Source: Vitrella brassicaformis CCMP3155 (lineage: Eukaryota > Protista > Chromerida). Taken from it: DNA of 64,000 nt. Position numbers and translations under genes: made by a program. Location: assembly GCA_001179505.1 (NCBI GenBank), contig CDMY01000358.1:39162-103161 (forward strand), written 5' to 3'. The notes beneath the pieces were generated by a model that had not been told where the DNA came from, did no database searches, and saw nothing but the letters and a program-made list of their open reading frames with translations. Numbering within the stretch: the first letter of the stretch is position 1; the number at the start of each line of letters is the position of its first letter. Of the stretch, positions 1,135 to 61,484 are shown one piece after another.

Positions 1135-2858
1135 TCAAATGCCCCCGGGGGGAAGTACTTTGAACACGGCCTTGGCCTGCATACACACACATACCGACAC
1201 ACCAGTTGTGTTACACACGGCTGGCTGCACGCCCACACCGTACGTACCCCATCCCATCCACCCCACCCACCCGTAGTGCGTCAAGCGGGACGAATCCGTA
1301 GTTGTGGCTGTCGATGCTCTCATTCATATTGTCTCCAAGCAGAAACACACAGCCATTGGGGACGACCTCAGGGCCAAAGCTATACATTGGTGGTGACGAC
1401 GACATCATCTTGTACCGCCCCCGCACATCCACACCGTTCACAAGCACCCCATCCGGCGAAATCGCAACGGTGTCGCCCTGTCCAAACAAACAGGCAGGCA
1501 GGCAGGACACAAACACACATTTCACGCATGTCTATCTGCGTCCATGCCTCTCCCCCCACGCAGGTGTGTGCATGAGAGCCCATGAGGGTCACCTCCTTAG
1601 CGATGATGCGTCTGAATGCGATGGCCCTGCCGCCCGCCAGCCGCCAGATCTCGTCGTCTCTGCTCGGGTCGCCAGTGGCAGCAATCTGACGCTTCACATA
1701 TTGCTGACACGGACACAAGAAACACAAAACAGATAGTTCATGTCTTTTGGCACTTGTTGGTTGTACACGCACGCACCTTTACGAAATCTGGTTGTGACAT
1801 CTCAACCACGTCCCCGACTTGGAAGGCGTCCCTGGAATAACCGCAACCAAAGTTTACCACCAAGCCTCTTGGTGTGATTGCTGGCTCTCTGCCTTACTGT
1901 TTGATGAGCTTGTTGACCACGACCAGGGACTGCGATTCAAGGACCGGCTGCATGCTCTGGGATGCGTTGATAACCGTGTCAAAAACAAAGAAGCGCAGCA
2001 GTAGGATGGGCAGGACGACTATGCCGATGGCCAGGGCGTCCCACTTGCCGCTCGTCAGCTCCTTCAGTGCCTTTGCCACACCAGTCGGCTCGCTCTGCAC
2101 ATACACACATACAGAAGAGACAGGCAGGCAGGCAGGCAGGCCGCCACTCAGACGGACTACATATGTCTGCAGTGCATGTCAGGGAACCCTGGGTGGGTAC
2201 CTACCTGTTGTTGCATCCTGCGCGCCTCCTCTTCTTGCTTCCTTCTCCTGACGAACTCGGCGATCATGCTGTCGCTGGGAGCCGAAGACAGGTCGTCGTT
2301 GTCTAACCCGGGGATAACAACCACCTTGTCCCCATTCACACCACCCTGATAGACCCACCAGCACACGGCCACACGGCACGACACGATCAATCATCAGCTT
2401 GTGCAGTGTGTCGTGATGGCACCCATCCCACCCACCCACCCACCCACCTGTTTCTTGGCTTCCCGCGGTATCACCATCAGCTCTCCGCCAGGCTGCCGGG
2501 ATGCTCTGTCAGTGGGCTGAGCTGGCGCCTGGGCTCGCTCCTCAAGGCCCTCAATCACCCGCAAGCCCAGCTCTTTCATCTGGTCACGTGCCGCAGTGTT
2601 GTCATCGAACCGCCCACTCTGGATCTGCTGAATGAGACTCTCGCTCCTGACCTCGTCACCCTCATCCTTCGGAGCCGATGCCTTGCCATCCGCCTGCATG
2701 TGCAGAGATCTGTGAAGCCTTCGCCGCCTGACATGCAGCGGCTGCCAATGGTGATGCCACAATGATGGAGCAGGGCCGACAAATGCTGACGAGATGAGGG
2801 CGGCGTGCACTGCAATCCCCATGGTGAACAAAGAAGAGATCAGGACGCTTCGCTGCAT
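1135..2858 (-). CDS. Type I signal peptidase (S26), plastid/thylakoidal processing peptidase-like, multi-exon, with bipartite leader
   Basis: Spliced protein has a hydrophobic leader ending SSA-FVG, an R/H-rich transit region, a TM segment (WDALAIGIVVLPILLLRFFVF), box B ASQSMQPVL, box C GDVVEMSQP, box D-like FRRIIAKEGDTV and box E GDNMNESIDSHNYGFVP. The C-terminal exon crosses a C/G homopolymer, so the stop at 1135 is less certain. Confidence 0.85.
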
Positions 2859-2947
2859 TCTTGTAAGCTAAGCTCGCAGAACGTTCCGTGAAACCGCTCG
2901 TCCCTCGAAAGCTCGCACCTCAAGATCTGCCGTCGTTTGGAAGAACG

Positions 2948-3959
2948 ATGAAGTTCTCGACGACTGTGAGCTCAGACCGGCGAAAATCGCGTAAGGCTCA
3001 CTTCCAGGCCTCCTCGTCGGAGCGCCGGAAGATCATGTCGGCGCCGCTCAGCAAGGACCTCCGCACCAAATACAACGTACGTACACACAAGACACACAAG
3101 GGGGGAGGGGTGGCAGGCGTCGTGTCACTGACGGGAGAGATCTGTCCTCGCCTATATCGGTATGTACTGGCACTTGTGTTGTGTGGGTGCAGGTGCGGAG
3201 TCTGCCCATCCGTAAGGATGACGAGGTCATGATAGTGCGAGGCCACTGCCACGACCGTGAGGGCAAGGTCACCCAGGTGTACCGCAAGAAGTGGGTCATC
3301 CACGTCGAGCGAGTCACACGCGACAAGGCCAACGGTACAGACAGACAGACACCCAAACAGCCCATCCCCCCCCCCCCCCCCCNNNNNNNNNNNNNNNNNN
3401 NNNNNNNNNNNNNNNNNNNNNNNNNNNNNNNNNNNNNNNNNNNNNNNNNNNNNNNNNNNNNNNNNNNNNNNNNNNNNNNNNNNNNNNNNNNNNNNNNNNN
3501 NNNNNNNNNNNNNNNNNNNNNNNNNNNNNNNNNNNNNNNNNNNNNNNNNNNNNNNNNNNNNNNNNNNNNNNNNNNNNNNNNNNNNNNNNNNNNNNNNNNN
3601 NNNNNNNNNNNNNNNNNNNNNNNNNNNNNNNNNNNNNNNNNNNNNNNNNNNNNNNNNNNNNNNNNNNNNNNNNNNNNNNNNNCCCCCCCCCCCCCCCCCC
3701 CCCCCCACACACACACACGCGGCGTCGGTTCGGTTGGCTCACTGGGTGTCCTGTCTGTCTGTCTGTCTGTCTGTCTGTGTCGGCACGTGTGCGTGACCGA
3801 CCAGGTTCGAGTGTGCCGATCGGTATTCACCCTTCAAAGGTGGTCATCACGAAGCTGAAGCTGGACAAGGACCGCAAGGCGCTGCTGGACCGCAAGAACC
3901 GGGAGACCAGGAAGGGCGGCAAATACGACAGGGACGTGCACATGTCCAGAGTCGATTGA
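2948..3959 (+). CDS. RPL26: 60S ribosomal protein L26 (uL24); exons 2948-3076, 3193-3334, 3805-3959
   Basis: [43 protein letters not shown] / [17 protein letters not shown]...[24 protein letters not shown] / [30 protein letters not shown], joined by GT-AG introns. Confidence 0.97.
3383..3681. other. Assembly gap (299 N) flanked by poly-C runs, inside RPL26 intron 2
   Basis: Run of N bases seen directly. Confidence 0.99.
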
Positions 3960-24665: not shown

Positions 24666-27600
24666 TCAACAGACGTGAATGGAAAGTGGGACTGTTTGGT
24701 CCAATCCGACATATGTATCAGACAAAACATAGATGGTCAGCTGGAATTGCGTTTGGCTTGCGCCTTCATCCGCTTCGGGTGCTGAAAACTTGAACACCGC
24801 AGAAGATGTCTTGCCTCGCAGACTCACCCGCTTGAGACCAATCAGCTCATCGACCTGCCACGGCAGGCAATACATATGCGAGACGAGACACGCACAAATT
24901 CCTGTCACCTACCTCCTCATCGCCGAGCAGGACCATCCAACTGTGCGTTTTCGATTGCTTGCTCAATGCAGTGAGAGCCATCTTCGTCGGTCGGTTTGCG
25001 TATTCGAGCCGGACTTTGATTTCGAGCGACGAATCTGGAGAGACGTGGTACGGAGGCCTCGAGAGCTGGCCCTCGCAAAACAACTCAACGTGAACTCGAA
25101 GCCGCGGTAGCTGCCCTATGCCCTGAAAAGACTCAACAGTGTGCCGTGCCACCAAAGAGGACATGCACTTTGAGTGAGTGACCTTGCAAGCATCTGTGAC
25201 TTGCTCCGAAGTTAGCCCCGGACGTAATGTCTGGAGTGCTTCACGTTGCTGTTTTTGCTCCATCTCAACCATCTATATAGATGACAAAAACAGAGGGGCA
25301 GTGAATTAGTTGTTAACCGTGTCAATTTGCTCGCCTTGGCAAGACTGATTCCTCCTGCGTCGAGCTGCCGGATGTGCTCCTGTCGCAGGTGGGGAAATGT
25401 ATAAAGAGAGGACCGCGCCGGAGTGGTTGCTTGCATGAGGCATTGAAGGGCCAGAATGATGTTGAGGGAAGAGGTCAGATGGCCTTCTTCAGCAGCGACG
25501 TCCGACATTCCCTGCATAATCCTGAGAGATTGGTCAAGAAGGTCCGCTAGATCCGTGTTGTAATCGGAAATCGGAAGCAACTCGCAGAAGTTAAAGACAT
25601 GCGCCTGAACGAGAAGGAAAGCCTTCAGGTGAGGCGAGTCAGCTGCAGATAGGTCGGCGTCAAGAGGACATAGCTCAGCGAGGTCAAAGTTCAGCTTGTC
25701 CTCGTTGTGACGCACAGGAAGCTCGGAGTACTCGGCACAGTCGCAAAGGAGCTTCAGAACGTCAGCCCAGCCAAGTCTCTCCTTTCTCCTCATGCTTCGC
25801 TGAAAGAGGGACACGGTCTCATGCTTCAGATAATGAAGCGAAGCAGTTCGGCCGAGTCGTGTCGCCTCAATCCTCAACTCCGTCCCGTCCTCGGCAAAAC
25901 TGACGCAGCCGGCATTCGTCAAGTTGGAAAGACACCCTTCGACGATGCGCTCAAGGTAGTCAAAGACATGCTGGCGCAGTGCCCTGCAAAACACGTGTGC
26001 TCACGTCATGACATGAGTCAGCCCTACCTACAAAACATTGAATACCTGGGGTCATTGCGATGCTTCTCCATTTCAATCGAAGCTTGCGGATCGTAGTACG
26101 CGCTGAAGAAAAGAAGAGACACGAGTTTGACACTTCCCTCAAACACAAAAAGTGTTTTCCTTGCCTGTTTGCCCATAGACGCCTGAAGAAGTACGTCCAT
26201 CTCAGGTACTCCAGCGCTGAGGCCTTCGACGTCACCGTCCCGGCCGCAATCTCAGCATTCAGGTGATCTACAGTGGAAAATGTGAAGGATGCGGATGAAT
26301 CGCGTATTGAGTCTCTTCTATTACCGGTAAGATGATCTGCAAGAGAGGACTCGACCGGAAAGGGTTCATGCAGAAACTTCCTGCAGAATCGACAAGGAAA
26401 CAAGTTCACAGCGCTTTCCAGTCACTTCCGAACAAATTTCACTTGTAGAAACTTTTCTTTGGTTGGTGGACGAATATGCACGCTTGGCCGCTTGTGTCGA
26501 ACTAAAAGACCGAAAAAACATATCGCTGCCGGTGCAGAAGCGCATGCAATAACCCAATCCCTGTGTACCTGAGGTCTTCCGGCGCGTCCGATCATTTGCA
26601 GGATATCGGTGATTGGCATGTCGACGTAGCGTTTGAGTTTTCCATCGTAGTACTCGGTGCCCTTAATGATGACCTGCGATACATTAGTACAGTAGATGAG
26701 TTGCGAAATGGCATGCGCTGACCAGGTGAGCAGGGAAGTTCACGCCTACAAAGACAGCAAAGCCGTATTTTAGTAATCGTGCGAACCTTCTCTGGTATTG
26801 GCCTACCCCATGCCAATGTCGCGGTTGTCACAAGAATCTGGATCTTCTTGTCGGTGAACAGCTCTTCAACAACCTTCCTATCTTTCTCACTTAACCCTGC
26901 GTGGTGTATTCCTGTGTGAGACGAGAGAAGCGCTTAGCTTTCGACCACGATAGTTTGATCATTCCTACCTATGCCATGCTCCAATGCCTTCTGCAAGCTC
27001 TCGTCACGTACCTGGAAATCACGAGGGAAAACAAATTTCATTGCCGTAACCGTTCTTTTCCCTACTCTCGCCCGGTGATAGTTGTATTCTTCGTCACTCA
27101 TCCACCGGAAGCGGAAGAAGTTCCTCTCGTCGTCAGACCCACACAATCCAACCAAATCCAATGCTGTTATCCGAGTCTGCCGACGTGACGAGACAAAGAT
27201 CAGCACCTGACCAACAAAAGCGGAACATGACGGTGACGAAATGATAACAGTGATAACGGGGACAACTGGTGCAACATTACTGGTCGGTCAGGGCTGAGTT
27301 CTTTGATTCGTTGGTAGCATGGCTTGTTCATTGTTGCCTGAAAGCAAAGGCAGATTGAATAAGTCGCAGTAATTAGATCATTCGCAACCATTCGTGGACA
27401 GTAGTGTTTCTCGCTGAAACCGTCGATGTGGGTAATCTGAGGAACAAACGTTGGCAGAGGATTGCCTGCTGGGTGTTGCCTTTGGAGCTGTGTGTGGAGC
27501 TGTACACAGGGAACCGGCCGAACTTCGGATGGAAAATTGAACAATCCAACCGTGCCAATTCCCAGCCTTTCCAACCAATAGGGTGAATTTCACGGAAAAC

Positions 27601-28360
27601 ATCAAGGAAAAGTATGTGGTCATCCACCTACCAGTCTGCAATGTCTTCGGCATTTGCAAGAGCGGTGGACAGGCCCACGAAACGAATTGCGTTGTCAGTT
27701 TGAGTTGATATATATCGCATTCGCGAAACAATGACCTGTCAAAAAAAGCCGAAAAGCAAAAGCGAACGCCGTCCGTTTTGGCCAGTCTACCTCGAGAACG
27801 GGTCCTCGGTCTTGCATGAAAAAGAAAAGACGCAGAAGCGGCGATGAAAGGCACCAGTAGGCATCCATACGCATGGCTTCTTAGCCCGTCAAAAAGTTGT
27901 TTGCCCACCTTGACCAAGAAGATGGATTTCATCGATGACGACCAAGCTAACCCTGAAACGACGAAGAACGAAATGTGCGGTTTTCGAATGCTCTAGTTCT
28001 GAGCAACCTCTGAACGTAGTCGCGATGTTGCCATTGTCTGCTGATGCCGTCCCACTTCTAAAGCCGAAGAAGAAACCTTGCGGAAGGGAAAACGGTTGCG
28101 ATGTTGTATGTTTACTTCTGGTGTCGTGACCACGACGTCGGCCTTGTCGAGTATACTTATGTCCGGAGTAAAATCACCGGTCAACTCGTGGACCTTTTTA
28201 CCGAGTTGACGATCGATTCGTTCGCTCCTGATAGAAAAAGCAGAATGTTCACATGTTGGTCAATCTTTCAGTCAGCAGACCAGTCCTTCATGCGCTCTCG
28301 TGCAAGAGCCTTTAACGGCGAAACGTAAACGACCTGCGGGAAAGAACAAGATAGGGAGAA

Positions 28361-28401
<41 letters not shown>

Positions 28402-31400
28402 GAGAAAGAAAAGAAAAGAAAGAAAGAAGAAGACGATACTGTGGAAGCTGCAATAAAGCACTGACCAGGGCCTTTGGATTGCGCGAAAACACGCGAAACA
28501 TTGCGAGCTCTGCCACGATGGTTTTGCCGCTGCCGGTCGGCGCGCCCAGGAGGATATTGTTATCACTGACGGGATGAATACATCAATGAGGAAGTACATC
28601 GCTGCTCCCGGTTCTTTGCTCACGTATGATACACTGCGTGGAAGACCTGTGACTGGATCGGGTTAAACGTCGGAAATCGGAAAAGGCTCTCGTATGCAGA
28701 GTGGTTGAGCGCCGTCACCGGCAATGGAGTTAAGGGCAACAAAGTCGTCTTGTGACCGATGCGCGATGTATTCGACCGTGGCAGTGTAAAGGTCTTCTCA
28801 AACGATAGGCCCACCCATCTGAAGGTAAGGCACAACAGACAATGAGTCAACAAAAAGAAGACCGCATTTCCTTTTGACCTGTCCGAGACGACTTTGAGTG
28901 TGTACTGGAGGGCTTTGTTGTCGGGAACAGGCACTGCAAAACTCAGGCTTTGTTGTTCACTCCTTCCAATCAAAAAAGAGCACAATCAATCAAAAAAGAG
29001 CACGTCAAGAAGACACCTTTTTCTCTTACCTATCCTTCTTCAGCAGAGTGAAATCCTCTGAATGCAACCTCTGCGTGCAGCCACCCTCTGCGTCCCAATA
29101 CTCAACCCAGACTTTAAAAGGCTCGGCGACGCCACTCCAAGTATCGGTCCACTTGAAGTCTGCCGTAATCGTGGCAGTGATGCGCACGATGGTCATCGCG
29201 ATTGGTTGCAACTTGACGTCAATGTTCAGACTGGGAATCCTGCAGGACAAGACCAACTGCAATTCGTGTCAGAAACCAACACGGCTGCTGTACCTCCGGG
29301 CATAGTCAAAGACGACTTTCCCAGCTGCAGGAAGAGACAGAACGTTGCCCAGCTCTCCAGCAGTCATGTCATGGATTCTGCGCAGACAGAGCCGCTTCTC
29401 TTACAAGAGCAATCTGTGCCGTTGGTTTCAAACTGACCGGTCAAGGTCTAGTCGCCGGTGCTCAATCTTATGGACGAGCTCGTGCTTTAGCAGACCACGC
29501 ACATCTTGGAAGGCAGCCATGCGTGAGTGGTGAGGGTCGATTGTCGACGGCGAGCAGAAATGGTGCAAGATGTGTCTCTCGACCGAAAGGCGCCTTACGG
29601 GGAAAGGAACAGAATTCACGTTGAGATGATTGACAGGCTCCCTGGTTCACCTGTCAATCATCTTGCACCATTCCAGGAGCCTCGGGGCAACATCAAAGTT
29701 CTGGACATTCTCTGTCAGGGTGATCTCGAACATAGCTCTCATCACTCTGCTTGCACTCTGAGGACCGACATTAGCAAAGAGTAGCAATGCAAAGACAAAG
29801 ACAGTAACCGCTGATGTCCTTGATCTTTTCCTTCTACGAGAACCTGCTGAACAAAATTCAAGTCTGAAACGAGACTAGAGGAGGAAACTGCTATCCTGCA
29901 CGATAATTCGAATGTCATCGGTTTGCGGCTCCGGAGCTTCGTGTTCTACCTGTTGATATAAGCTTGAAGGAGGAGACCAACTTTCCCGTGGGTGTGTTCA
30001 GGGCCACCACGCACTCTTACAGGGCAGCTTTCTGCGATGTCGCCAAGCTCTTGTTGCTCCTCCTCCCTGACCTGCATTGTTTGTTTCGAGATTCTCATTC
30101 AGTTTCCAAACACCTGTACCTTGAGCTGAGCGAACTCTTCAGCCGTGCCAAATAACTCTAGCAGCTCGGCGTCTGTCATCTCCTTACGTGCCGCCAGCAA
30201 TTCCACAAACTTTCCCCTTGAGACGGTCAGACAAGACGGGCAGACAAGACGGGCAGACAAAACAAACACACCATTGTAGGTTGAGAAGGACGGCACGACG
30301 TTGTCGCGACTCACGAACTCACGTCGTTTCGTAATCGATGTAGTATCGCGCGGCAATTCTTCCGATGGCTGTGGGCGCCAGCTGTTGATTGGAGAGCCGC
30401 AGTAACTTGTTCGCGTCCAGCTTCTTGACAGCCTGGGATGCAAGTAGAAGTGAAGAGCGTTTTTCGGCTGCAGGCTTCTTACCGATGTCACAATGTCCCG
30501 TCGCTTTGCAATGAGATGAGGATCGTGAAGAAGCTCCTCTGGTTTGATGCCATACACGTGCGGGCTTCTGGACAAAATGGAAACGGGCGATGATGAAATA
30601 ATGTATTTACGCCACAGTGACATCTACGGCACCTGGCCATTCTGACGAAGAGGTACGTATACCCCAAATAGTCAATGGCATCGTTGATGTCTGCGATGTT
30701 GTTCATTGCGATTTCGGCGTTGAGGGCGTTGCACATGTTGTCAAGCATCTTGCTCTCGATGGGAATCTACAGATACTGGATGAGAGGCTGAAGTCAACGC
30801 CATCCGACTCACTTGGTTGTTTATCTTCATGAGATAGCTGTCCAACTTGTCGTGAGATGTAATGAGGACGGCATGGCCGAGGTCGTCGAACTGCGGGCGG
30901 CCAGCCCTCCCGAAAACTGAGCCAGTCGACGATCAAGACACTGTACAAATGTAAATGTAGACTGTATATACCTTGAAGAATGTCCAGAACATCTGCATCA
31001 AAACCCAACATTAAGCCACTTCAATGACTTCTCTCCTTTTTTGACCTATGTCTCGGAAGCCTCCGTGCTTGGAGTCGAAAATAGAAGAACCACGAATGAC
31101 GACGGTCCGCGCCGGCAGGTTAACTTTTGAGGAAACAAAAAACATGCGAACAAAAAGGCCTGCGCGTCGGTCGTGAAAGCTTGTGCGTACCTCCCCACTT
31201 CAAGCAAAAAGTGAGAAAAGTGATACAGAAGAAAAACAAACTCTGTTTCACTGTTCTTACCGCCAGGGTCGCCGTGCAGCACAGGACCTTGATACAGCCC
31301 GTCATAAAGAGCCTGACGGGGACCAACGTTTCTGCCTCCTGTGTCTAGCCGACCCTATCCTTGCACCTTTCGACGTTTGAGCGATCACTCCTCAACATGC

Positions 31401-34400
31401 CTGCGTGATGCATTGCGAAACCGCTCGGGACTAGCTCTAAAACCTGAGGAGAGCGGATGCGACGAACGATGTCAGCCCGATTCTAAACAAAAGCATGTGA
31501 ATGGTAGCAAGAATGTTAAATGTGACATTGGTCTAGTGCACACATGCCTCGTGGTCAAGGAATCGTTCGAGGTCGCCTTTTGCCGACGCAATCTCCATTA
31601 ACGCTTTCGCTGCTGTGTATGTGTCTCCTCGCGAGTGGACAAAGACCATTGCCTGATGTCCGCTGGAAATCGCAGCCTGTACGGCGACACAAAGGATCAA
31701 AATGAAAGATTGGACGGTGCTCAACGACCTTGATCTTCTCATAGCAGAGCTCGTTCATCCGGTGAAGACGCTGCAGAAGCACAGAGCAAGAAAATGTCAA
31801 CAAAGGGATCCAGATAAACGAAAGGGATGCAGACGAACGCACCCTTTGTGGATCCTTTTCAGCAACGCTGCAGACAGCACAGAGCAAGAAAATGTCAACA
31901 AAGGGATCCAGACGAACGAAAGGGATGCAGACGAACGCACCCGATGAATGTCTGCTGCAATGGAATGGGTCTGATCAACGGACACGACAAAAGCACAGAA
32001 CGAATCAGCTCCTTTGGGTCGATCTATCTATCCTTCTTCATCGATCCTTTAACCTGTAGGACGAGTCGAAATGGAATGCATGATCGGCCGGAACGTGGAA
32101 GAACTGAGCAACGTCGGTCCTGGATCCTCAAGGCACACAGGCTTGTCGTGTCGTACCCATCCATTCGTCGGAATCGGCCCCTACCAGTTAGGAAGTGTTG
32201 CCGATATGGCGACGAGCCGAATGAAAGCGCCCGAGGTCTCCATGTATCTCTTTGCTCGAGCGACGATGGACTCGATGACCGGCCCACGGTCGTCATTCAG
32301 CAGATGCACCTCGTCAATGATGATCAAAGCAACCTGCAGATGTCTCCCAGGTACTGATTGCGGAGAGTGATCCGTGTAACATCATGTGTCGACCTTACCT
32401 TGCTCATCAAGCTCGAATCCTCCCGACCAGCCCCTGTGGCCGTGTTCCGAGTAAGTATATCCTGTGTGCACACACACGCCATCCACTCGGAGGGCTTCCA
32501 TGAAAGGGTGATGCTTACAAACTTCTCCGGGACTGTCACGATGAGATGGACTCGTTCCAGCTCCTGGCGAGTGAGTTGCATGTCTCCAGTCATCTCTTTG
32601 ACCTCGATGCCTGATACAGCCACGGAGACACACCACGTGTACCCGAGACACCAGATGGGCCCCGATGCTGATATGGTGAACTGCCTTCCAACCAAGCGGT
32701 GCAAGGCGGGATGAGAACTTCTCGACCACCTCGGCAACCAGGGCCTTCATGGGAGCAATGTAGACCATCTTGAACTCCTTGGGTGATAGGACAGCACCGA
32801 ATGCATCCCTGTTCGCCTCAATCGCTTGAAGGATTGTCAGCATCGCTACATTGGTCTTGCCAGCCCCAGTAGGCGCGGAAACCAAGAGGTTCGAGGTGCT
32901 CCCGAATGCCTTGTTGAACACGATCGACTGCACGGTGTTGAGGTGTGTTGTCCCCTCAAAGGCCATTTGGGCCCACTCAGGCAAACTCCCGACAGGCACA
33001 AGCTTGCCTCTCGGTGCCTGGTACAGAGGCGCGCAGATGTACGAGGGTGGAGGGCGATTAACAGTGACCTGCCTTCACCTCAGATTTTCTCGGAGCAGGA
33101 ACGTCTATTTCTTCGTACTTAAACCTTTTCGGAGACATCGCACATTCACCAGGGGGTGTATCACGCGTGCGAGGACGTATACTGAAGAGACACGACTTCA
33201 TACCCTTGTGTCCGTTTTGTTCCTTCTGGCAAGACCATCCTCAGTCCCGCTCCCCGTCCAGCATCTGAGCCACAGTGATGACAGGCGTCGACAGCAACAG
33301 GAGGGATCGTTACAAGCGCTTCGGATGGCTTCTCACCCCTGGCTGAGGCAGGCGGGCCGACGGCCTTTAGAGTTTGCGACAGCATCTTGAGTCCACCTCT
33401 CGCACTGCCCAGAGTCTGTTCAGCGAGGTACTGTTGATCGAAGCCTGAAACCCACCGCAAGCCGGGTGTTGTCGTTTGTGGTTGATGACGGCTGACCTGT
33501 GGCTTCGAGGATCTCTAGCGAGGACAGATGCGGTCTCGTCCCTGACGCAAGTAGCAAGTATGGAGCCGTCGTTGTGGTCCTTTAGGTCAGGTCAGCTCAC
33601 CCCTTCCTTTCCTTTCTTGCTTCATCCTTCGCAAGTCGGACTCCGAACGGATTGAGAACTGCAGAGCAGGCCCACAGGGAGGCAGGCAGTTGGTGCTGGG
33701 GTGGAGAGTGCGATGAGAGCTCTCAGCACGTATTCAGCGCTCACCTGTGGCGTTTGTGTGATGGGCTTCCGGTTTGTCTTTCTGTCTTGCGGCAGCCTGC
33801 TGATCGCCTGTTCCCGGAGTGCGTCAACCATGACCAGCATCACGGGCCGCTTCTGCAAAATGTCAGCCGCTGTCTCTATGCCCTCGATACCCAGAAGGTC
33901 CAACATGGTGCCCTACAGATGGCGTCAGACAGCGAGGAAGGGATGCATTCCCCATGGCGCGCATTGGGCTACCTGCAATGCTTCATCGGCCATGTCACTG
34001 CAGAGAACCTCGATGATCCTTGACACTAAATCTGACAGAATGCATGCAGAATTGGTACACAGCAGGGACCAGCCAAATGGGTCAGTCTGTCTTCGGCGGT
34101 AGCCTCCGCGGGTGAGTCATTCACCGACCTTTGACTTGTGCCAGAGCGGGCTCGTTGCCAGCTCCGCGCTGCTTCAGATGGTGAGTGACAGTCTGGCGTA
34201 GCCAACGCATCTGACCGGCGGTGGATTCCATATCAGCCGCGTCGCTGGGCACAGGGCTGGCCTCGGCAGGACATCTCAACAGAGCCTCATAGCCAGCAAC
34301 ACCTGCAGCCAGCAAACGGACAGGAGTATCTGCAGAACAGCCAACTACAGCTATCTCCGCGTGGTGCCTCGTTCCCTGTTTGTTTCCCCTCCCCCGCCCT

Positions 34401-60631: not shown

Positions 60632-61484
60632 ATGGGCGCTGAGTAGTAGCTGGCTGGCGGGCCGTGTGTGATTCGACTGGCTGGGTGATGCCTGAGCGAC
60701 GATAATGCCTTCCCTTCTGTCAAATGAAGCTTTCTGTTGTTGAGAGTTGAGATGGCAGGTAGCAGCTGTTCTCTTTATTTAGGTGCCTGCTGCAGCGTGT
60801 GTCTATGTGTATGTGTCAGTGTATGTCTCATCTCTGTTTCTGTCTGCAGAGAGACATGCGTGCACCTGATCAGATCAGCTAGTTGCCGACGCCTGAGACC
60901 ATCAAGTGTGCAGGAGATGCCTTCGCCCGCCATGTCGTGGACCGAGCGAGGTCGTCTTGTTGCAGTCTTGATCGTGTCAGGCGTAGGGTTCTGCAGACAA
61001 AACGCGCGCAGAAAGGGCCAACTTGCATCTCTCTTCCCCTAGTCGTGTCATTAATGCCTTCAGGCTCGTCAGATGATTCTGGACGTCTGACATGACATCG
61101 TGACTGGTGTTTCGATCAGATACGATGTGATGTCAGACGTCATGAACCATCTGACGAGCCTGACCACGCTGTATGTATCTGGTCGACGCAGATACAGCGT
61201 CAAAGATAGCCGAGTAACATGCCTGGCCGAACGTTGCTTGTGCGATGCCGTCCTTCGCCAGTGAAAGGGCCTTGTTCGAGATATCTCACTCATTCCAAGG
61301 ACGTCGCTGCTATGTGTTTCTTCCTTCCTGGTATGCTATCAGCTGCTGTCACTGTGTATCGTTTGGGTCTCTCCTTCTTGTCGTGGGGAGACCCATTCGT
61401 TCCCCACAAACATGATTGAGAGGGCAGCCGGCCCGTGCGCAAGATTGAACATCAATATGTTAACGCATCAATCCATTCATTCAT

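What the first reader, a model, noticed from the sequence alone, without database searches (positions are those of the whole stretch)
31771..31940. Twin introns: two adjacent, almost identical introns around a 25-nt exon, with no duplication in the protein
Seen: the 73-nt and 72-nt introns differ by only 2 substitutions and 1 indel. The flanking exon sequences are unrelated except for the shared insertion context GG|CGT. The spliced protein [31 protein letters not shown] is collinear with the conserved Brr2/ASCC3 segment (RPVPLxQTxxG...MNExxYEK). No target-site duplication or terminal inverted repeat is visible; each intron has an internal ~19-bp tandem repeat. Inference: a recent intron gain by copying a neighbouring intron (reverse splicing or an Introner-like element), or gene conversion between introns. 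Direct source-and-copy cases of intron gain are rarely caught.
Basis: partly seen in the sequence, partly recalled or inferred. Interest (0 to 1): 0.75.

Follow-up and report, generated by a model that had tools for sequence, protein, structure and literature searches.

The report
Intron copied next door in ASCC3
In the RNA-helicase gene ASCC3 of the alga Vitrella brassicaformis, one short intron has been copied once into a matching spot 25 bases away, a clean but not unprecedented case of intron birth where source and copy can both be seen.

Summary
On the minus strand, two GT..AG introns (73 nt at 31868-31940, 72 nt at 31771-31842) differ by one CG>TA dinucleotide and one 1-nt indel. They flank a 25-nt micro-exon. 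Identity stops at GG upstream and CGT downstream.

Removing both introns gives a product exactly collinear with the genome's own uninterrupted Brr2 paralogue. It also gives the spacing found in 117 of 128 full-length ASCC3 orthologues.

The genome is the published 72,700,666-bp Vitrella brassicaformis assembly and holds only these two copies. The introns have no terminal repeats, no stable fold and no Rfam match, so this is not an Introner family.

The shared GG|CGT context is not the gene's splice consensus, which is AG|G (p about 2e-4). None of 32 informative metagenomic orthologue loci has an intron at either site.

Best reading: a one-off local copy of a whole intron into a look-alike site. 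I favour two microhomology-guided template switches over reverse splicing, but this is not settled.

Same-gene intron duplication is known in fungi, Oikopleura and C. elegans. This scan had already noted other twin-intron pairs elsewhere in this genome, and I re-verified the adenosine deaminase pair.

RNA data and the gene structures of close relatives could not be reached.

The parts
31868..31940 (-). Twin intron 1 (73 nt, GTGCGT...CTGCAG, phase 2, splits the Gly codon GG|C). It keeps CG in the second 19-nt unit, matching the first unit.
   Evidence: (recovered independently by the homology-guided spliced alignment).
31843..31867 (-). 25-nt micro-exon encoding 8 residues (VAEKDPQR after the split Gly). 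It occupies exactly the 8 residues that orthologues have at this place.
31771..31842 (-). Twin intron 2 (72 nt, phase 0). It is a multiple of 3 with no in-frame stop, so retention would add 24 residues and not break the frame.
31941..31970 (-). 30-nt exon upstream of intron 1, ending ...ATCGG.
31729..31770 (-). 42-nt exon downstream of intron 2, starting CGTCTT. The donor may lie 3 nt further on (exon 31726-31770).
31971..32053 (-). Neighbouring 83-nt intron, unrelated in sequence to the twins.
   Evidence: (z 0.34).
31677..31728 (-). Neighbouring 52-nt (or 49-nt) intron, not significantly similar to the twins.
   Evidence: (z 1.3).
24696..33007 (-). Well-supported part of the ASCC3 gene: two Ski2-like helicase cassettes with Sec63 domains, 48 modelled introns (46 besides the twins) with median length 58 nt, and median exon length 84 nt. 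The N-terminal part further upstream, to about 36450, is poorly modelled.

Best explanation
This is a single, recent, local duplication of a complete spliceosomal intron inside the ASCC3 gene of Vitrella brassicaformis. An ordinary 72-73-nt intron, already carrying an internal 19-nt tandem duplication, was copied once into a site 25 nt away. That site had the same, unusual, exon context (GG before, CGT after). The copy split off a 25-nt micro-exon and left the protein unchanged.

Shown: the two copies, their exact boundaries, their uniqueness in the genome, the collinear coding sequence and the non-consensus look-alike context.

Inferred mechanism, favoured at roughly 5:3 over reverse splicing: a polymerase made two microhomology-guided template switches during repair of a break, or a stalled fork, at GG^CGT. 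A 3' end finishing in the complement of CGT primed on the nearest upstream CGT, which is the first triplet after intron 1. It copied the intron and was resolved on the GG pair. Only such an exact copy is tolerated in a conserved helicase exon. Under this model intron 1 (upstream) is the more likely source.
For: Boundaries:
- Identity covers the intron plus GG and CGT and nothing else.

Copy number and structure:
- Only two copies exist in 72.7 Mb.
- No TIR or TSD, no stable fold (z +0.9 and +0.4) and no Rfam family.

Coding sequence:
- Splicing both introns gives exact collinearity with the uninterrupted Brr2 paralogue.
- It also gives the RPxPL-to-VFVHSR offset of 41 seen in 117 of 128 orthologues.
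- Retaining intron 1 gives a stop.

Look-alike context:
- The other 46 introns of the gene have AG|G contexts. GG before the donor occurs in 1 of 46 and CGT after the acceptor in 0 of 46, so the position-wise probability of GG|CGT is 2.2e-4.
- Intact GGCGT occurs only twice in 5,285 exonic nt.
- The only CGT in the micro-exon is its first triplet.

Neighbours and relatives:
- Introns 25 nt upstream and 42 nt downstream are both retained. This fits DNA-level copying better than recombination with a cDNA.
- None of 32 informative orthologue loci from metagenomes has an intron at either site.
- A second twin-intron pair in the same genome (adenosine deaminase, L010 660-742 and 1191-1277) was verified here.
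Against: - No RNA-seq, raw reads or gene structures of close relatives could be examined, so splicing is inferred from conservation and polarity is unknown.
- A 72-nt templated insertion is longer than the usual polymerase-theta products (my knowledge).
- No polymerase theta was found. Four of six family-A polymerase loci look like Pol I or the plastid PREX enzyme, and two were untested.
- A DNA-level process should also leave imprecise short local duplicates in neutral DNA. None was seen in 150 kb of this genome, although the expected number is small.
- The adenosine deaminase pair shares only the near-consensus GAG upstream and nothing downstream. Junction microhomology is therefore not a general rule, and exact intron boundaries there fit a spliceosome-defined process better.
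- The genome has at least 69 reverse-transcriptase matches, so RT is available.
Confidence: 0.5

Rival explanations
1. Spliceosomal reverse splicing (intron transposition). The excised lariat of one intron was reverse-spliced into the same or a sister transcript 25 nt away. The RNA was reverse-transcribed and the cDNA recombined with the gene.
For: - The copy boundaries are exactly the splice sites.
- No imprecise short local duplicates occur in 150 kb.
- The verified adenosine deaminase pair has exact ends without downstream junction identity.
- Many RT genes are present.
- This is the classical explanation for same-gene intron copies (PMC3443670, PMC3609843).
Against: - The spliceosome holds exons through invariant U5 and U1 contacts. 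It should therefore prefer consensus AG|G sites, not an intron-specific non-consensus GG|CGT.
- A cDNA from a spliced RNA would lack intron 1 and the 52-nt intron. Keeping both needs conversion-tract ends within 25 and 42 nt, or reverse transcription of unspliced pre-mRNA (inference).
- Reverse splicing has only been shown under non-physiological conditions (PMC3443670).
Confidence: 0.3
2. An older pair of paralogous introns is kept nearly identical by gene conversion. The duplication is then ancient and only the similarity is recent.
For: The two copies are 98 nt apart in direct orientation, a favourable arrangement for conversion. Other agents report homogenised introns elsewhere in this genome (note s1-239481, not tested here).
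Against: - Conversion cannot create the pair from unrelated introns, because flanking homology is only 2 and 3 nt.
- A 72-nt tract is near the lower limit for efficient conversion (my knowledge).
- No distant orthologue has an intron at either site.
Confidence: 0.1
3. A member of a mobile Introner or introner-like element family.
For: The introns are near-identical, and alveolates such as Amoebophrya are known to carry introners (PMC7789003).
Against: - Exactly two copies exist in the genome, by BLAST and by a 34-nt pattern with up to 3 mismatches.
- There is no match in JGI metagenomes.
- There is no TIR, TSD or stable structure.
- At 72-73 nt the length lies within this gene's intron range (39-132 nt; median 58).
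Confidence: 0.02
4. Assembly artefact: a short repeat wrongly expanded by the assembler.
For: The assembly is from short reads, and the repeat period (98 nt) is close to read length (PMC4501334).
Against: - The copies differ at three positions.
- The 25-nt exon between them encodes exactly the 8 residues that orthologues require, and both boundaries are canonical splice sites in the right phases. An artefact would not produce this.
Confidence: 0.03

Closest known systems
Same-gene duplications (SGD) of near-identical introns in fungi (van der Burgt/Collemare; PMC3609843); also three cases in C. elegans cited there
   Same: There are two near-identical regular introns in one gene and low copy number. 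In about half of the fungal cases the flanking exons are not duplicated, and these are read as intron transposition within a transcript.
   Different: This case is in a chromerid alga. The spacing is only 25 nt, creating a micro-exon. Both junctions share a non-consensus 5-nt context, which gives a handle on mechanism that the fungal survey did not report.
Intron transposition cases in Oikopleura dioica and Mycosphaerella graminicola (reviewed in PMC3443670)
   Same: New introns are homologous to another intron of the same genome, and this is taken as indirect evidence for copying of introns.
   Different: Those cases were assigned to reverse splicing by default. Here the retained neighbouring introns and the junction identities point at least as much to template switching.
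Introner elements and introner-like elements (Micromonas, Aureococcus, fungi, Amoebophrya; PMC3879977, PMC4540971, PMC7789003)
   Same: Near-identical introns generated recently.
   Different: Those families have hundreds to thousands of copies in unrelated genes, often with TSDs or stable folds. This case has two copies, 98 nt apart, and neither feature.
Microhomology-mediated templated insertions at DNA breaks (polymerase-theta end joining; PMC7165422, PMC4912351; Schimmel et al. 2019 as cited in PMC8469720)
   Same: A nearby sequence is copied in direct orientation. The source lies within tens of nt of the junction, with 2-3-nt identities at both junctions.
   Different: The insert is longer than usual, the copied unit is exactly an intron, and no polymerase theta gene was identified here.
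Intron gain at double-strand breaks with flanking direct repeats (Daphnia type; listed in PMC3443670)
   Same: Break repair as the source of a new intron.
   Different: There the new intron is flanked by a short duplication of the target. Here a single copy has no flanking repeat. A locus of that type was seen in passing in a metagenomic orthologue (L034).

Membership tests
Introner / introner-like element | Tens to thousands of near-identical copies in unrelated genes | tested here: not met
   Two copies in 72.7 Mb and none in metagenomes.
Introner / introner-like element | Terminal inverted repeats or target-site duplication, or unusually stable secondary structure | tested here: not met
   No inverted repeats or TSD. 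Folding z-scores are +0.91 and +0.44.
Same-gene intron duplication (intron copying without exon duplication) | Two near-identical introns in one gene | tested here: met
   96% identity over 78 nt, the only self-match in the 12-kb gene region.
Same-gene intron duplication (intron copying without exon duplication) | Flanking exon sequence not duplicated; protein collinear with orthologues | tested here: met
   (offset 41 in 117 of 128 orthologues).
Same-gene intron duplication (intron copying without exon duplication) | At least one of the two positions empty in relatives (polarity of gain) | tested here: inconclusive
   Both positions are empty in 32 distant metagenomic loci and in the Brr2 paralogue.
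Same-gene intron duplication (intron copying without exon duplication) | Both copies spliced in vivo | not testable with these tools
   Inferred from conservation, phases and intact donor, branch-like TTGAC and CAG acceptor in both copies. No RNA data were reachable.
Intron gain by tandem duplication of an exonic AGGT segment | New intron consists of duplicated exon sequence | tested here: not met
   The intron is unrelated to the surrounding exons and no exon segment is repeated.
Polymerase-theta-type templated insertion | Insert copied from nearby DNA, with microhomology at both junctions | tested here: met
   The source is 25 nt away, with GG and CGT shared and non-consensus.
Polymerase-theta-type templated insertion | A polymerase theta gene in the genome | tested here: inconclusive
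   There are six family-A polymerase loci. The four tested are Pol I-like or PREX-like, and two were untested.
ASCC3/Slh1 helicase (host gene) | Two Ski2-like helicase cassettes, each with a Sec63 unit; best matches named ASCC3 | tested here: met
   PDB 8alz_B ASCC3 at 8e-36. Full-length relatives are named ASCC3 with PF00270, PF00271 and PF02889. The Brr2 paralogue is a separate locus on C185.

The most novel reading that the evidence does not exclude
Vitrella has an ongoing, non-transposon way of multiplying introns. Ordinary introns 'bud' into nearby look-alike sites through microhomology-guided template switching. This process, not introner elements, would have built its extreme intron density: 48 modelled introns (46 besides the twins), with exons down to about 20-30 nt, in this one gene. 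The several twin-intron pairs noted across this genome would then be its youngest products, and the mechanism could be read directly from their junctions.
Probability: 0.2. Interest if true: 0.8.

Novelty: new member of a known kind. Interest (0 to 1): 0.5.

Why it matters
How new spliceosomal introns arise is still argued, and cases where both the source and the copy are visible are few. This pair is unusually clean in four respects:
- the ends are exact;
- the two copies are unique in the genome;
- the host is a conserved gene, which fixes the reading frame;
- a rare 5-nt identity at the two insertion contexts discriminates between models.

Together with other pairs in the same genome, it suggests that Vitrella could serve as a natural system for measuring local intron copying. 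By itself it is one more example of a known phenomenon in a new lineage, not a new kind of element.

Tried and rejected
1. Older copies nearby. Pairwise local alignments of nine introns against shuffles show that the neighbouring introns are not significantly similar to the twins. Self-BLAST of the 12-kb gene region finds nothing else.
2. Structured or small-RNA-bearing intron. There is no Rfam hit and no fold better than shuffles. The apparent stability of the 230-nt region is inflated by the repeat itself.
3. Introner family. Rejected.
4. Public gene model or transcripts of the N-terminal half.
   - The large protein search returned only a 731-aa C-terminal model of this gene.
   - Two word searches, built on a full-length relative with the window's exons given one by one by reference, were swamped by full-length orthologues. 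They returned no Vitrella protein covering the twin region.
   - The joined spliced model was deliberately never built for any search. Exons were handled one at a time.
6. Polymerase theta. Not found among four of six family-A polymerase loci.
7. A 1-Mb sample of the genome, to count imprecise local duplicates. The 150 kb already held was scanned instead.

Full report
What is there. The finding lies in a gene on the minus strand. Read 5' to 3' on that strand, the order is:
- a 30-nt exon (31970-31941) ending ATCGG;
- a 73-nt intron (31940-31868);
- a 25-nt exon (31867-31843);
- a 72-nt intron (31842-31771);
- a 42-nt exon (31770-31729) starting CGTCTT.

Both introns begin GTGCGT and end CTGCAG. 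Both carry a TTGAC branch-like motif about 28 nt from the acceptor. They differ only by one adjacent CG>TA change and one G indel in the pyrimidine tract. Each contains the same 19-nt unit twice in tandem, so that small duplication came before the intron was copied.

Identity extends exactly two bases upstream (GG) and three downstream (CGT), then stops. In the whole 12-kb gene region this is the only significant self-match. In the 64-kb window it is the only non-simple direct repeat of 40 nt or more within 3 kb.

Are they introns?
- Retaining intron 1 runs into a stop. Intron 2 is in frame and open, but would add 24 residues.
- Removing both gives [11 protein letters not shown], then VAEKDPQR, then [14 protein letters not shown]. 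This lines up residue for residue, without gaps, with the uninterrupted reading frame of the same genome's Brr2 paralogue on contig C185 and with full-length orthologues.
- In 117 of 128 full-length ASCC3 proteins, the distance from RPxPL to the VFVHSR motif is 41 residues. That is exactly what the two-intron model gives.
- A homology-guided spliced alignment that I wrote, using a 1,859-aa relative against 12 kb of the window, recovered the same two introns with the same phases, 2 and 0.
- The spliced model was never joined for any database search. Exons were given one by one, by reference.
- RNA evidence could not be reached.

Host gene and organism. The exons match ASCC3/Slh1 and Brr2 structures. 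Full-length relatives are named activating signal cointegrator 1 complex subunit 3. Brr2 is a separate locus.

The assembly has 72,700,666 bases in 1,064 pieces. These are the exact figures published for Vitrella brassicaformis CCMP3155 (PMC4501334).

From about 33007 to 24696 the gene carries 48 modelled introns (46 besides the twins), with a median length of 58 nt. Median exon length is 84 nt, and several exons are only 20-30 nt. The micro-exon is therefore not exceptional for this gene.

Not a mobile family.
- BLAST of the intron against the whole genome, and a 34-nt pattern with up to three mismatches, find only these two copies.
- A 24-nt core is absent from the metagenome collection.
- There are no inverted repeats and no target duplication.
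- The introns fold no better than shuffles, and no Rfam family matches.
- The neighbouring introns are not older relatives.

The informative detail. The other 46 introns of this gene sit in the usual AG|G context. GG before the donor occurs once, CGT after the acceptor never, and C at +1 three times. The position-wise probability of a GG|CGT context is about 2e-4. Intact GGCGT occurs only twice in 5.3 kb of exon. The copy therefore went into a rare look-alike of the source's own exon junction, 25 nt away.

Mechanism: template switching. Two microhomology-guided template switches explain every feature.
- They account for the direct orientation, the source within tens of bases, and the identities of 3 and 2 nt at the two junctions.
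- They leave untouched the introns lying 25 nt upstream and 42 nt downstream.
- The only CGT in the micro-exon is its first triplet. An end primed on the nearest CGT would therefore start copying exactly at the 3' end of intron 1. This mildly favours intron 1 as the source.

Mechanism: reverse splicing. It explains the exact ends by itself, but two points weigh against it.
- It does not predict an intron-specific, non-consensus context.
- The cDNA step would have to spare two very close introns.

Points against the DNA-level model.
- I found no polymerase theta among four of the six family-A polymerase loci.
- The insert is long for that pathway.
- I found no imprecise short local duplicates in 150 kb of this genome.
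- The adenosine deaminase twin pair, which I verified, shares only a near-consensus GAG upstream.

I put template switching at about 0.5, reverse splicing at 0.3, an older pair kept alike by conversion at 0.1, and artefact or Introner at a few per cent together.

Age and polarity. Among 38 metagenomic loci encoding relatives of the neighbouring exon, 32 cover the region. None has an intron at either twin position.
- Most of these loci are uninterrupted across the region.
- A group shares a conserved intron two codons upstream of Vitrella's next intron.
- One locus (L034) has an evidently independent intron one codon away from site 2.

Neither position is therefore ancient and widespread.

Context within this scan and the literature. 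Notes from this scan list other twin-intron pairs in the same genome: adenosine deaminase, a repeat protein, and a pair around a 26-nt exon. This finding is thus a further instance on different DNA. Only the adenosine deaminase pair was checked here.

Same-gene duplication of introns is described in fungi, with further cases cited for C. elegans (PMC3609843). Intron copies in Oikopleura and Mycosphaerella are reviewed in PMC3443670. Among the ten listed papers that mention two of introner, Vitrella and Chromera, none describes intron duplication in chromerids.

Verdict: a real, well-defined member of a known kind. Its main value is the junction evidence on mechanism.

Noticed in passing
L034:2290-2480 (metagenome contig Ga0115013_10032541): In an uncultured eukaryote's ASCC3-like gene, an intron lies one codon from the position of twin intron 2. 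It is flanked by a perfect 15-nt direct repeat (CAGGTGCGCAAGGAC) and filled with telomere-like CCCTAA repeats. The preceding intron also ends in CCCTAA repeats. This looks like an independent intron gain at a repaired break.
   Followed up: partly
L051, L053, L054, L056, L058, L059, L060, L061, L063 versus window 31677-31728: Nine metagenomic orthologue loci share a phase-0 intron two codons upstream of the Vitrella intron that follows the 42-nt exon. Either this is a 6-nt intron slide or the gains are independent.
   Followed up: no
window 27338-27388 (minus strand): The only retrieved protein identical to this gene (P0001, 731 aa) covers only the C-terminal third. It reads through a 51-nt in-frame stretch (17 residues, VANDL...CFQ) that orthologues lack and that my spliced alignment calls an intron. 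The gene model behind it therefore seems split and partly unspliced.
   Followed up: partly
window 24696-33007 (minus strand): Extreme intron density in ASCC3: about one intron per 110 coding nt, with exons down to about 20-25 nt. The Brr2 paralogue (G000:C185, L008), by contrast, has a 343-aa open frame spanning the matched N-terminal exon, and its stretch equivalent to the twin region is uninterrupted.
   Followed up: partly
window 61060-61163: A 104-nt imperfect palindrome (self inverted match, 81%).
   Followed up: no
L011:1-811 and 2390-3204 (G000:C275:60123-63482): An 817-nt direct repeat at 96.8% identity, 2.39 kb apart, at an adenosine/AMP deaminase-family locus. This is a recent segmental duplication.
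   Followed up: no
window 31842-31771: Twin intron 2 is 72 nt and open in frame. Retention would not trigger a premature stop but would insert 24 residues into the first helicase cassette. Skipping the 25-nt exon would shift the frame.
   Followed up: no
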